A stretch of 63,779 nt of DNA, counting the filler, from Octopus bimaculoides (taxonomy: Eukaryota), in assembly GCF_001194135.2 (NCBI RefSeq). It is 6 parts of 6 records of this genome, joined end to end, with 100 filler letters (N's around TTAATTAATTAA, not from the genome) between each part and the next. Parts side by side here need not be neighbours in the genome. Positions count along the whole stretch, not along the records: positions 10,682 to 32,556 come from NC_068994.1; 5 more parts are not named here. One strand, 5' to 3'. A program made the translations under genes and the position numbers. Under the pieces are notes generated by a model. The model searched no databases. It worked only from the letters and a program-made list of their open reading frames with translations, and had not been told where the DNA came from. Below, one piece after another: positions 17,108-18,802 of this stretch (the stretch's first letter is position 1; each line of letters opens with the position of its first letter).

Positions 17108-17221
17108 TTGAATATGAACAGCATAGTGGAGGAGATTAACGACAAACATATGGAGCCATGGGCTGATGCCTGTCAAAGGGACAATGTCACAAATACCCCA
17201 TTGAACCCATTTATTGACCAG
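17108..17221 (+). CDS. SDR epimerase-like gene, last detectable exon (no stop; terminal exon not found)
   Basis: ccttacag acceptor, gtttgt donor. Encodes LNMNSIVEEINDKHMEPWADACQRDNVTNTPLNPFIDQ; phase 0 to 0. Confidence 0.88.
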
Positions 17222-17326
17222 GTTTGTCTGTGTTTTGGTTTTTTTGTTTTTGTTTTTTTACCTTATTCCCTTTCCACTCTTTAAGCCACCACTATAGAAG
17301 GTTTTTTGCTAATATTTGACCCCAGG

Positions 17327-18734
17327 AAGGTGACAACTTGGCAGAACCATTAGCATGCCAGTCAAAATGCTCAGCAGCGTTTTTTGATTCTTTACATTCT
17401 GAGTTCAAATTCCGCTGAGGTCAACTTTGCTTTTTATTCTTTCGGGAAGCCTCAGCTAAATACTGGAATTGCCGTAACTGACTAATCTCTCTCCCTAAAA
17501 TTACTGGCCTCATGCTAAAATTTGGAAAAACTAGAACCATTAGCATGCCGGCCAAAACGATTAGTGGCATTTCATCCATCTTTACAATCTGAGTTCAAAT
17601 TCCACTGAGGTCAACTTTACGTTTTGTCCTTTCAGGGTTGATGTAATTGACTTAACCCTTTGCCCTGAAATTGTTAGCCTTGTGTCAAAATATGAAATCG
17701 TTAGTATTTTTATTATTATTAATTAAGGTGGTGAGCTGGCAGAATCATTAGGACACTGGACAAAATGCTTTGCAGTATTTTGCCCATTGCTATGTTATTT
17801 CAAATTCCACCAAGGTCGACTTTGCCTTTCATCCTTTTGGGGGTTGATAGATTAAGTATCAGTGAAACACTGGGGTCGGTATAATTGACAAGACCCTCTC
17901 CGCACAAATTTCAGGCCTTGTGCCTATAATAAGGATTATTATTAAGGGTTGACTTTGCCTTTCTTTCATCCTTTCAGGATTGAGCACAGGGGGAGGGGGG
18001 GCGTGTAATTGACAATCCTCCCCTCAAAAAAATATCAGACTTTGTGCTCTTAGAAGAAAGAATCATTATTATTATTATTATTAGTAGTAGTAGTAGTATT
18101 GAGGCAGCAAGCTGGCAAAAATGCATAGCGGTATGTTGCCCATCGCTACATTCTGCCAAGGTTGGCTTTGCCTTTCATCCTTTTGGGGTCAGTAAATTAA
18201 GTACCAGTGAAACACTGGGGTCGATGTAATCAACTAGTTCCCTACTCACAAATTTCATGCCTTGTGCCTTTCGTAGAAAGTATTATTATTATTATTATGG
18301 TGGCAAGCTGGTAGAATTGTTAGTGTGTCTATCAAAGGGCTTAGTGGCATTTCCTCTGACTCTTTATATTATGAGTTCAAACCCTGCCAAGGCCAACTTT
18401 GCCTGTCATTCTTTTGGAATCAATGAAATAAGTACCAGTTGAATACTGGAATCAATATAATCGATTATCCCCCTCCCAGAAATTGCTGGCATTGTGCCAG
18501 AATTTGAAACCATGAAGGTGACAAGCTGGTAGAACCATTAGCTCACCAGGCAATATGCTTAGCGGCATTTTGTCTGTTTTGATGGTCTGAGTTCAAATTC
18601 TGCTGAAGTCAACTTTGCCTTTTGTCATTTTGAGGTCAATGAAATAAGTACCAGCTGAGTACTGGGGAAGGGGGTCGATGTAATCGACTATCCCCCTTCC
18701 CCCAAATTTCAGGCATTGTGCCTATAGTAGAAAG
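17327..18734 (+). mobile_element. Tandem cluster of 6-7 SINE family B copies
   Basis: Repeated GGTGAGCTGGCAGAATCATTAG...GAGTTCAAATTCC (A/B-box-like)...GACTTTGCCTTTCATCC...GTGCCTATAGTAGAAAG units, starting near 17327, 17531, 17725, 17940, 18101, 18297 and 18514. Confidence 0.85.
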
Positions 18735-18802
18735 AAAACTCTTCCGGCGGTATCTTCCATTCAAAAGGTGCTGGAGTTTCCAAGTTTTTTGACTGTCTTC
18801 AG
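18735..18802 (+). CDS. RTEL1: RTEL1 internal exon; acceptor lies in a SINE tail and is uncertain (18731 or 18735)
   Basis: Encodes NSSGGIFHSKGAGVSKFFDCLQ, which resembles the recalled human RTEL1 segment [20 protein letters not shown] that precedes IVF. Strong donor cag|gtgagt, in phase with the 22434 exon. Confidence 0.65.

What the first reader, a model, noticed from the sequence alone, without database searches (positions are those of the whole stretch)
17108..18802. SDR epimerase exons run straight into mid-RTEL1 across a SINE cluster: chimeric gene or misjoin
Seen: the SDR exon chain stops at donor 17221 with no stop codon, and I find no terminal SDR exon downstream. About 1.5 kb later, with no N gap, the RTEL1 chain starts on the same strand in the middle of the helicase, and no upstream RTEL1 exon is visible. 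The first RTEL1 exon has no pyrimidine tract of its own and abuts a SINE-B tail (...GTGCCTATAGTAG|AAAG|AAAAC). The AG at 18729-30 would give a 72-nt phase-0 exon (KENSSGG...) in frame with the phase-0 SDR donor, so an SDR-RTEL1(C-half) fusion is formally possible. Against this: the adjacent AG at 18726-27 and the stronger pyrimidine-tract acceptor at 18712 both introduce an in-frame stop. Inference: this is either a SINE-mediated rearrangement or deletion that fused two genes, or an assembly collapse inside the repeat cluster.
Basis: partly seen in the sequence, partly recalled or inferred. Interest (0 to 1): 0.72.

Follow-up and report, generated by a model that had tools for sequence, protein, structure and literature searches.

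The report
Two partial genes joined across SINEs
A gap-rich draft cephalopod scaffold puts five exons of an epimerase-type SDR gene directly in front of the back half of the RTEL1 helicase gene, with only seven SINE repeats between them; two relatives keep each gene complete at this point with no exon of the other beside it, so this is most likely an assembly misjoin, not a new fusion gene.

Summary
Five SDR (PF01370 epimerase) exons end at the phase-0 donor at 17221. Six RTEL1 exons start at 18731/18735, inside the ARCH domain. The 1.5 kb between them has no N and is about 94% SINE: seven head-to-tail copies.

The SDR lacks its last ~70 residues, which all six homologues examined keep. RTEL1 lacks everything N-terminal to the last third of its ARCH domain.

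Relatives show separate, complete genes. A 239-kb long-read contig (L001) has the two missing SDR exons 2.8 and 4.3 kb downstream of the same exon, and no RTEL1. Argonauta hians has the preceding RTEL1 exon 1.47 kb upstream of the orthologous small exon, and no SDR.

All retained exons are intact, with conserved intron phases. The orthologous RTEL1 acceptor is phase 1 (AG 18733-34), so splicing from the SDR donor frameshifts and stops after 28 codons. Only a non-orthologous AG 4 nt upstream (18729-30) is in frame.

The piece has six N runs, and both ends lie in repeats. Best reading (about 0.8): a repeat-induced misjoin or skipped sequence. A real deletion or rearrangement cannot be excluded without reads. 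No same-species data could be reached.

The parts
11811..11964 (+). SDR exon A (…EEKKCDPWTFVAKHKL…VRPAIVYGPGDRQGL), phase-1 donor
   Evidence: tblastn; splice sites
14367..14419 (+). SDR exon B (TPRLIIGAIYKYMRETMK)
15629..15755 (+). SDR exon C (MLWTKELKMNTVHVEDM…DKGDT)
16115..16200 (+). SDR exon D (TQGKISELISTIFNIEHEFVGSTMSSLAK)
16817..16829 (.). N run: left edge of the N-free block 16830-24586, which holds SDR exon E, the SINE array and two RTEL1 exons
16836..16996 (+). Young ~160-nt repeat (family A), 93-95% identical to three other copies in the piece, 110 nt upstream of exon E
17108..17221 (+). SDR exon E (LNMNSIVEEINDKHMEPWADACQRDNVTNTPLNPFIDQ); last SDR exon present; phase-0 donor CAG|GTTTGT
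17222..17319 (+). Short non-SINE stretch at the start of the intron after exon E
17320..18734 (+). Array of seven head-to-tail SINE copies (~190-240 nt, 60-83% alike, (ATT)n-type tails). It holds the junction between the two gene fragments
18710..18734 (+). Candidate acceptors inside SINE copy 7. CAG 18710-12 has a strong Py tract but gives stops. AG 18726-27 gives a stop. AG 18729-30 is phase 0 and in frame with the SDR donor. AG 18733-34 is phase 1, as in Argonauta
18735..18802 (+). First RTEL1 exon present (x-NSSGGIFHSKGAGVSKFFDCLQ), in the ARCH domain; donor CAG|GTGAGT, phase 0. It would start at 18731 if AG 18729-30 were used
23628..23703 (+). RTEL1 exon (VHIAEMKAKWNQKSVDRWVNSSEPQ)
27072..27204 (+). 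RTEL1 exon (KRELSYWCLCPGF…ILTSGTLSPMSTFSSELK)
28698..28811 (+). RTEL1 exon ([38 protein letters not shown])
30253..30293 (+). RTEL1 exon (RFDVKYQTSLGNLI)
31682..31767 (+). RTEL1 exon (INISYVIPHGLLIFFPSYPLMDSCITYWK), start of Helicase_C_2

Best explanation
The junction is most likely an assembly artefact. Two separate, normal genes are an extended-SDR NAD-dependent epimerase/dehydratase-family gene and RTEL1. They have been brought together inside a run of SINE copies in a fragmentary short-contig draft scaffold. The cause would be either a chimeric path through a SINE copy that is near-identical at two loci, or contigs left out between them followed by gap filling with SINE sequence. On this reading the SDR's last two exons and the first half of RTEL1 lie elsewhere in the real genome, and no SDR-RTEL1 protein is made.

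Shown here: both gene fragments, the parts that are missing, the repeat content of the junction, the frame incompatibility, and normal gene structures in relatives. Inferred: that the join itself is not in the animal's DNA.
For: (1) The truncations are complementary and fall exactly at the repeat array. The SDR stops after exon E, and its conserved C-terminus (ELLYNK…LFPP…, present in P0001, P0002, P0003, P0005, L001 and L004) is absent from the piece. RTEL1 starts at about profile position 100 of 181 in ARCH_RTEL1, with no earlier exon.

(2) All 5 SDR and 6 RTEL1 exons are open and have canonical splice sites. Conserved motifs are kept (VRPAIVYGPGD, NTVHVED, ILTSGTLSP, NPHII, LLIFFPSY). All checked RTEL1 intron positions and phases match Argonauta.

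(3) Relatives. The L001 239-kb contig has SDR exons F and G 2.8 and 4.3 kb downstream of exon E and no RTEL1 within 10 kb. The Argonauta 2.47-Mb contig has the preceding RTEL1 exon 1.47 kb upstream and further 5' exons in order, with no SDR exon. In L004 IDQ-ELLYNK is continuous, and no RTEL1 is nearby.

(4) About 94% of 17222-18734 is SINE, and at least 7 more copies of the family lie in the piece.

(5) The piece has six N runs in 21.9 kb, and both of its ends lie in repeats. SINEs make up 11.6% of the Octopus vulgaris genome (PMC13282606).

(6) Splicing the phase-0 SDR donor to the orthology-consistent phase-1 acceptor gives a frameshift and a stop after 28 codons.

(7) From established knowledge: RTEL1 is essential in mouse. 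A genome whose only RTEL1 copy lacked Walker A/B and the Fe-S domain is therefore unlikely.
Against: There is no N in the junction. A single N-free block, 16830-24586, carries SDR exon E, the array and two RTEL1 exons.

The seven SINE copies are only 60-83% alike, so a simple collapse among them is not forced.

Both genes are on the same strand, and an in-frame AG exists.

The relatives compared are distant. Exons are about 80% identical at nucleotide level, they hold no copy of this SINE, and RTEL1 is 48-63% identical at amino-acid level. They therefore do not exclude a lineage-specific rearrangement.

No reads or same-species assembly could be reached.
Confidence: 0.8

Rival explanations
1. 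A real genomic deletion or rearrangement, for example recombination between same-orientation SINEs, joined SDR intron 5 to the RTEL1 intron. It would exist as one allele or as a non-functional locus, with no useful fusion product.
For: The block 16830-24586 is continuous and N-free. The SINE copies are all in the same orientation, giving a recombination substrate, and both genes are on the + strand. The exons are intact, as expected for a very recent event.
Against: It would remove the ATPase and Fe-S half of RTEL1 and the conserved SDR C-terminus. It is not seen in two relatives. SDR and RTEL1 are not shown to be neighbours in any genome examined. A priori it is much rarer than misjoins in gap-rich short-contig assemblies (inference).
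Confidence: 0.12
2. A functional chimeric gene. SDR exons A-E splice from the donor at 17221 to AG 18729-30, giving an SDR-(RTEL1 ARCH-end + HD2 + C-terminus) protein.
For: The phase-0 donor joined to the acceptor at 18729-30 gives one open frame through at least the next two RTEL1 exons.
Against: The orthologous acceptor phase is 1 (AG 18733-34), which frameshifts. The in-frame AG has no pyrimidine tract. It sits between a stop-giving AG 3 nt upstream and the phase-1 AG 4 nt downstream, and a strong decoy CAG lies at 18710-12. The product would lack the SDR substrate-domain end and the RTEL1 Walker A/B motifs, so neither activity is expected. Neither of the first two protein searches (SDR exons, RTEL1 exons) returned a protein that combines the two halves. 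This is weak evidence, because the species seems absent from the database.
Confidence: 0.03
3. The genes are interleaved or nested. The missing SDR exons F-G and/or the RTEL1 5' exons are hidden in N runs or lie outside the piece, so both genes are complete but intertwined on one strand.
For: Six N runs of 10-562 nt exist, and exons F and G are only about 100 nt each.
Against: No such arrangement is seen in L001, Argonauta or L004. In Argonauta the intron in front of this exon is 1.47 kb and holds no SDR. Exons of two genes interleaved on the same strand would not splice correctly.
Confidence: 0.04

Closest known systems
Repeat-induced chimeric contig or scaffold (misjoin or skipped sequence) in short-read draft assemblies
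   Same: The junction lies wholly in an abundant interspersed repeat. Both flanks are otherwise normal. Each flank's gene is cut at the junction. The scaffold is gap-rich and ends in repeats.
   Different: There are no read-level symptoms to inspect (coverage, clipped reads, discordant pairs). The join is inside an N-free block, not at a gap.
SINE/Alu-mediated non-allelic recombination deletions that fuse neighbouring genes
   Same: Same-orientation SINE copies lie at the join, both genes are on the same strand, and internal exons are lost on both sides.
   Different: The two genes are not shown to be neighbours. There is no evidence that the breakpoint lies in one hybrid SINE. The natural splice phases do not match (0 versus 1).
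RTEL1 (Rad3/XPD-family Fe-S DNA helicase)
   Same: The exons from 18735 onward match the end of the ARCH_RTEL1 domain and the start of Helicase_C_2. Exon boundaries and phases are those of Argonauta RTEL1.
   Different: Only a middle segment is present in the piece. The N-terminal helicase domain 1, the Fe-S cluster and most of ARCH are absent.
Extended SDR, NAD-dependent epimerase/dehydratase family (Pfam PF01370)
   Same: Exons A-E match the second half of the family profile and several animal homologues.
   Different: The Rossmann N-terminus would lie upstream of the piece. The conserved C-terminal ~70 residues are missing after exon E.
SINE exonisation or SINE-donated 3' splice sites (as known for Alu)
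   Same: All usable AGs in front of the first RTEL1 exon lie in the last 9 nt of a SINE body.
   Different: Here the exon is an old conserved one, not SINE-derived. Whether the SINE truly abuts it in the genome is unverified.

Membership tests
RTEL1 helicase | ARCH_RTEL1 domain (PF23109) | tested here: met
   The spliced window exons score 27.5 bits against a cut-off of 27, matching profile positions 135-181. Argonauta P0011 scores 75 bits.
RTEL1 helicase | Exon order, boundaries and intron phases collinear with a named RTEL1 orthologue | tested here: met
   Six exons are collinear with P0011/L002. The junctions after e1-e5 and the donor of e6 keep the Argonauta position and phase.
RTEL1 helicase | N-terminal helicase domain 1 with Walker A/B and Fe-S cluster (DEAD_2) | tested here: not met
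The same probe finds these exons in Argonauta L002.
Extended SDR epimerase/dehydratase (PF01370) | Match to the family profile above its cut-off | tested here: met
   36.5 bits against 20.9, profile positions 143-239 of 240.
Extended SDR epimerase/dehydratase (PF01370) | N-terminal Rossmann GxxGxxG motif and catalytic YxxxK | not testable with these tools
   In homologues these lie N-terminal of exon A (P0003, P0007), which is upstream of the piece edge at 10682.
Extended SDR epimerase/dehydratase (PF01370) | Conserved C-terminal segment ELLYNK…G(F)xY…(L/I)FP shared by the close homologues | tested here: not met
   Absent from the piece by tblastn and by profile HMM. Present in L001 and L004.
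Chimeric (fusion) gene | Open frame across the junction using the natural splice sites of both parents | tested here: not met
   The phase-0 donor joined to the orthologous phase-1 acceptor (18735) frameshifts and stops after 28 codons. Only the non-orthologous AG 18729-30 is in frame.
Chimeric (fusion) gene | Junction present in independent DNA reads or in transcripts | not testable with these tools
   No same-species sequence was found.
Chimeric (fusion) gene | Same arrangement in related genomes | tested here: not met
   L001, Argonauta L002 and L004 show separate, complete gene structures. All three are distant relatives.
Assembly misjoin | Junction lies in repeated sequence, in a fragmentary assembly | tested here: met
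   Seven SINE copies fill 17320-18734. The piece has six N runs, and both ends lie in repeats.
Assembly misjoin | Read-pair, long-read or coverage break at the junction | not testable with these tools
   No read data are available.

The most novel reading that the evidence does not exclude
The join is real. A lineage-specific SINE array mediated a deletion or rearrangement that put SDR exons A-E in front of the RTEL1 ARCH-end exon. A SINE-derived AG (18729-30) then lets a chimeric SDR-RTEL1(C-half) transcript be made, while intact parent genes persist elsewhere.
Probability: 0.04. Interest if true: 0.5.

Novelty: not a real feature. Interest (0 to 1): 0.1.

Why it matters
If the join is an artefact, its value is practical. 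This scaffold should not be used to call a fusion gene, to infer loss of the RTEL1 helicase core, or to infer synteny. Gene predictors will probably emit a false SDR-RTEL1 model here.

If the join were real, it would be a documented case of SINE-mediated gene fusion in a cephalopod, affecting an essential telomere helicase. That would be of moderate interest, but nothing found here argues for it.

Tried and rejected
Same-species evidence:
- Exact look-ups of five window ORFs that carry exons found nothing.
- Two exact-pattern scans of metagenome contigs, one for the SDR donor region and one for the RTEL1 exon, found nothing.

Adjacency in Argonauta:
- The third protein search, using the Argonauta RTEL1 upstream exons, returned no Argonauta N-terminal model, so the region upstream of RTEL1 could not be fetched.
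- Its hit P0048 lies on a gene-dense contig from another, unrelated sample, so I did not use it.

SINE classification:
- Rfam and ARAGORN gave no tRNA-like hit, so the element's SINE class is unconfirmed.

Literature:
- The first 'find' for SINE in the Amphioctopus paper mostly matched 'sinensis'.

Readings considered and rejected:
- The first RTEL1 exon is not truncated by the join. In Argonauta it is also a separate small exon (62 nt) with the same 3' boundary.
- The SDR is not nested in the RTEL1 intron in Argonauta: that intron is 1.47 kb, and no SDR exon is found anywhere in the 46-kb locus.

Full report
**What is in the sequence**

The usable piece is 10682-32556. It has six N runs: 15256-65, 16817-29, 24587-615, 27632-813, 29626-733 and 30847-31408. 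Both of its ends lie inside repeats. It therefore looks like part or all of a small scaffold from a fragmentary draft.

On the + strand, five exons encode the second half of an extended-SDR, NAD-dependent epimerase/dehydratase-family protein:
- A 11811-11964
- B 14367-14419
- C 15629-15755
- D 16115-16200
- E 17108-17221

All have canonical splice sites. tblastn against homologues gives E-values down to 7e-19. The spliced product hits PF01370 at 36.5 bits. Exon E ends at a phase-0 donor (GAC CAG|GTTTGT) with no stop, and read-through stops 20 codons later.

**What is missing from the SDR**

Homologues P0001, P0002, P0003 and P0005 all continue IDQ-ELLYNK… for about 50-75 more residues, except P0003, whose sequence ends after 26.

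In L001 this tail is split into two exons. L001 is a 239-kb long-read contig from ENA sample ERZ21867824, and its exons are about 80% identical to the window's at nucleotide level. The two exons are:
- F, 34 codons, ELLYNKHLHLDGTKLESLGFAYQKPELTIESMQE
- G, 35 codons plus stop, VLEDYLHTGLFPPSLL…

They lie 2.8 and 4.3 kb downstream of the exon-E orthologue. In a compact genome, L004, IDQELLYNK is continuous.

Neither tblastn nor a profile HMM of five C-termini run on all six-frame segments (best E 0.23) finds this tail anywhere in the piece.

**The RTEL1 side**

Six + strand exons are collinear with the Argonauta hians RTEL1 fragment P0011:
- 18735 (or 18731)-18802
- 23628-23703
- 27072-27204
- 28698-28811
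- 30253-30293
- 31682-31767

They cover the end of ARCH_RTEL1 (PF23109) and the first 30 positions of Helicase_C_2. The intron positions and phases at the five junctions after the first exon, and at the donor of the last exon, are identical to Argonauta.

The first exon is a separate small exon in Argonauta too, 62 nt long with the same donor. The window exon is therefore not a truncated piece.

No RTEL1 exon lies upstream of 18731 in the piece. It finds nothing upstream of 27080 in the window, but it finds the DEAD_2 exons in Argonauta.

In Argonauta (contig BAAFZT010000017.1, 2.47 Mb) the preceding exon, RYIFELL…NSH, lies 1.47 kb upstream, and further 5' exons lie in order within 29 kb. There is no SDR exon anywhere in the 46-kb locus.

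**The junction**

17222-18734 contains no N. It is about 94% SINE: seven head-to-tail copies of a ~190-240-nt element, 60-83% alike, mostly with ATT-rich tails. At least seven more copies lie in the RTEL1 part of the piece. None is found in L001 or Argonauta, so the family is lineage-specific.

The consensus 3' end is …GTGCCTATAnTAGAAAG followed by (ATT)n. Copy 7 ends at 18734 with no tail, and the RTEL1 exon follows directly.

A second, younger repeat (family A, 93-95% identity between copies) and an N run lie just upstream of exon E. The unique island that carries exon E is therefore only about 320 nt wide, between repeats.

**Can the two halves splice in frame?**

Results for the four candidate acceptors:

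| Acceptor | Outcome when spliced to the SDR donor at 17221 |
|---|---|
| AG 18726-27 | immediate stop |
| CAG 18710-12 (strong pyrimidine tract) | stops |
| AG 18729-30 | open SDR-RTEL1 frame |
| AG 18733-34 | frameshift, stop after 28 codons |

The Argonauta intron at this position is phase 1 (…CAT G|GTCAGT … CCAG|CT TCA). The junctions after the first five RTEL1 exons all keep their phase. In the window only AG 18733-34 gives phase 1.

The natural RTEL1 acceptor is therefore out of frame with the phase-0 SDR donor. The in-frame option depends on a non-orthologous AG 4 nt upstream that has no pyrimidine tract.

A fusion protein would also lack the RTEL1 Walker A/B and Fe-S half, and the conserved end of the SDR.

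**Interpretation**

Four facts fit parts of two functional genes placed side by side by the assembly:
- Both genes are cut at the same repeat array.
- Every retained exon is intact and conserved.
- Two relatives keep each gene complete at this point, with no exon of the other gene nearby.
- The splice phases do not match.

Repeat-rich octopod genomes make such errors likely. SINEs are 11.6% of the O. vulgaris genome (PMC13282606). From general knowledge, RTEL1 is essential in mouse, which makes a genome with only this truncated copy implausible. I put the artefact at about 0.8.

Points against the artefact:
- The join is inside an N-free block (16830-24586).
- The visible SINE copies are too diverged from each other for a simple collapse among them.
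- The relatives are distant.

A real deletion or rearrangement (about 0.12), a functional chimera (about 0.03), or interleaved genes with exons hidden in gaps (about 0.04) cannot be excluded without reads.

**Unexplained detail**

The only AGs available to the first RTEL1 exon all lie in the last 9 nt of SINE copy 7. That copy has no tail, and a strong decoy acceptor lies 22 nt upstream. Either a SINE really sits flush against a conserved exon and supplies its acceptor, or the misjoin is at this very point. The data here cannot tell which.

**Limits**

- No same-species sequence could be reached.
- The Argonauta region upstream of RTEL1 could not be fetched.
- The SINE gave no Rfam or tRNA hit.

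Noticed in passing
window 18869-19703: In the intron after the first RTEL1 exon there is an (AC)28 run, followed by a 717-nt minisatellite of 22/45-nt units (about 32 copies, 87-91% matches). It is strongly C-rich on the + strand (GC skew -0.8).
   Followed up: no
window 29264-29990, minus strand: Remnant of a mariner/Mos1-type transposase: HTH_48 at 63.9 bits and Transposase_1 at 69 bits. It is interrupted by the N run 29626-29733 and lies in an RTEL1 intron.
   Followed up: partly
window 13995-14151 (+), 16417-16573 (-), 16836-16996 (+), 32294-32451 (-): Four copies of a ~160-nt repeat, 93-95% identical to the copy at 16836-16996. This is far younger-looking than the SINE array. One copy abuts the N run just upstream of SDR exon E. 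ARAGORN finds no tRNA in it.
   Followed up: partly
window 10682-10852, 20011-20320, 22700-22790, 23183-23267, 28106-28282, 32520-32556: A third repeat family. The piece starts and ends inside copies of it at about 92% identity. This suggests the piece is a whole small scaffold that stops in repeats.
   Followed up: no
window 18710-18735: SINE copy 7 abuts the conserved RTEL1 exon with no tail. It supplies every possible acceptor AG, and it also carries a strong decoy acceptor (CCCCCTTCCCCCAAATTTCAG) 22 nt upstream that would break the RTEL1 frame.
   Followed up: partly
L002 10001-10048 (Argonauta hians BAAFZT010000017.1): The annotated Argonauta RTEL1 model P0011 is partial and starts in the middle of an exon. 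RTEL1 exons upstream of it (L002 1740-9985) were not returned as a protein model by a search with their translations, and a separate 310-aa model carries the Helicase_C_2 part. RTEL1 is therefore fragmented in that annotation as well.
   Followed up: partly
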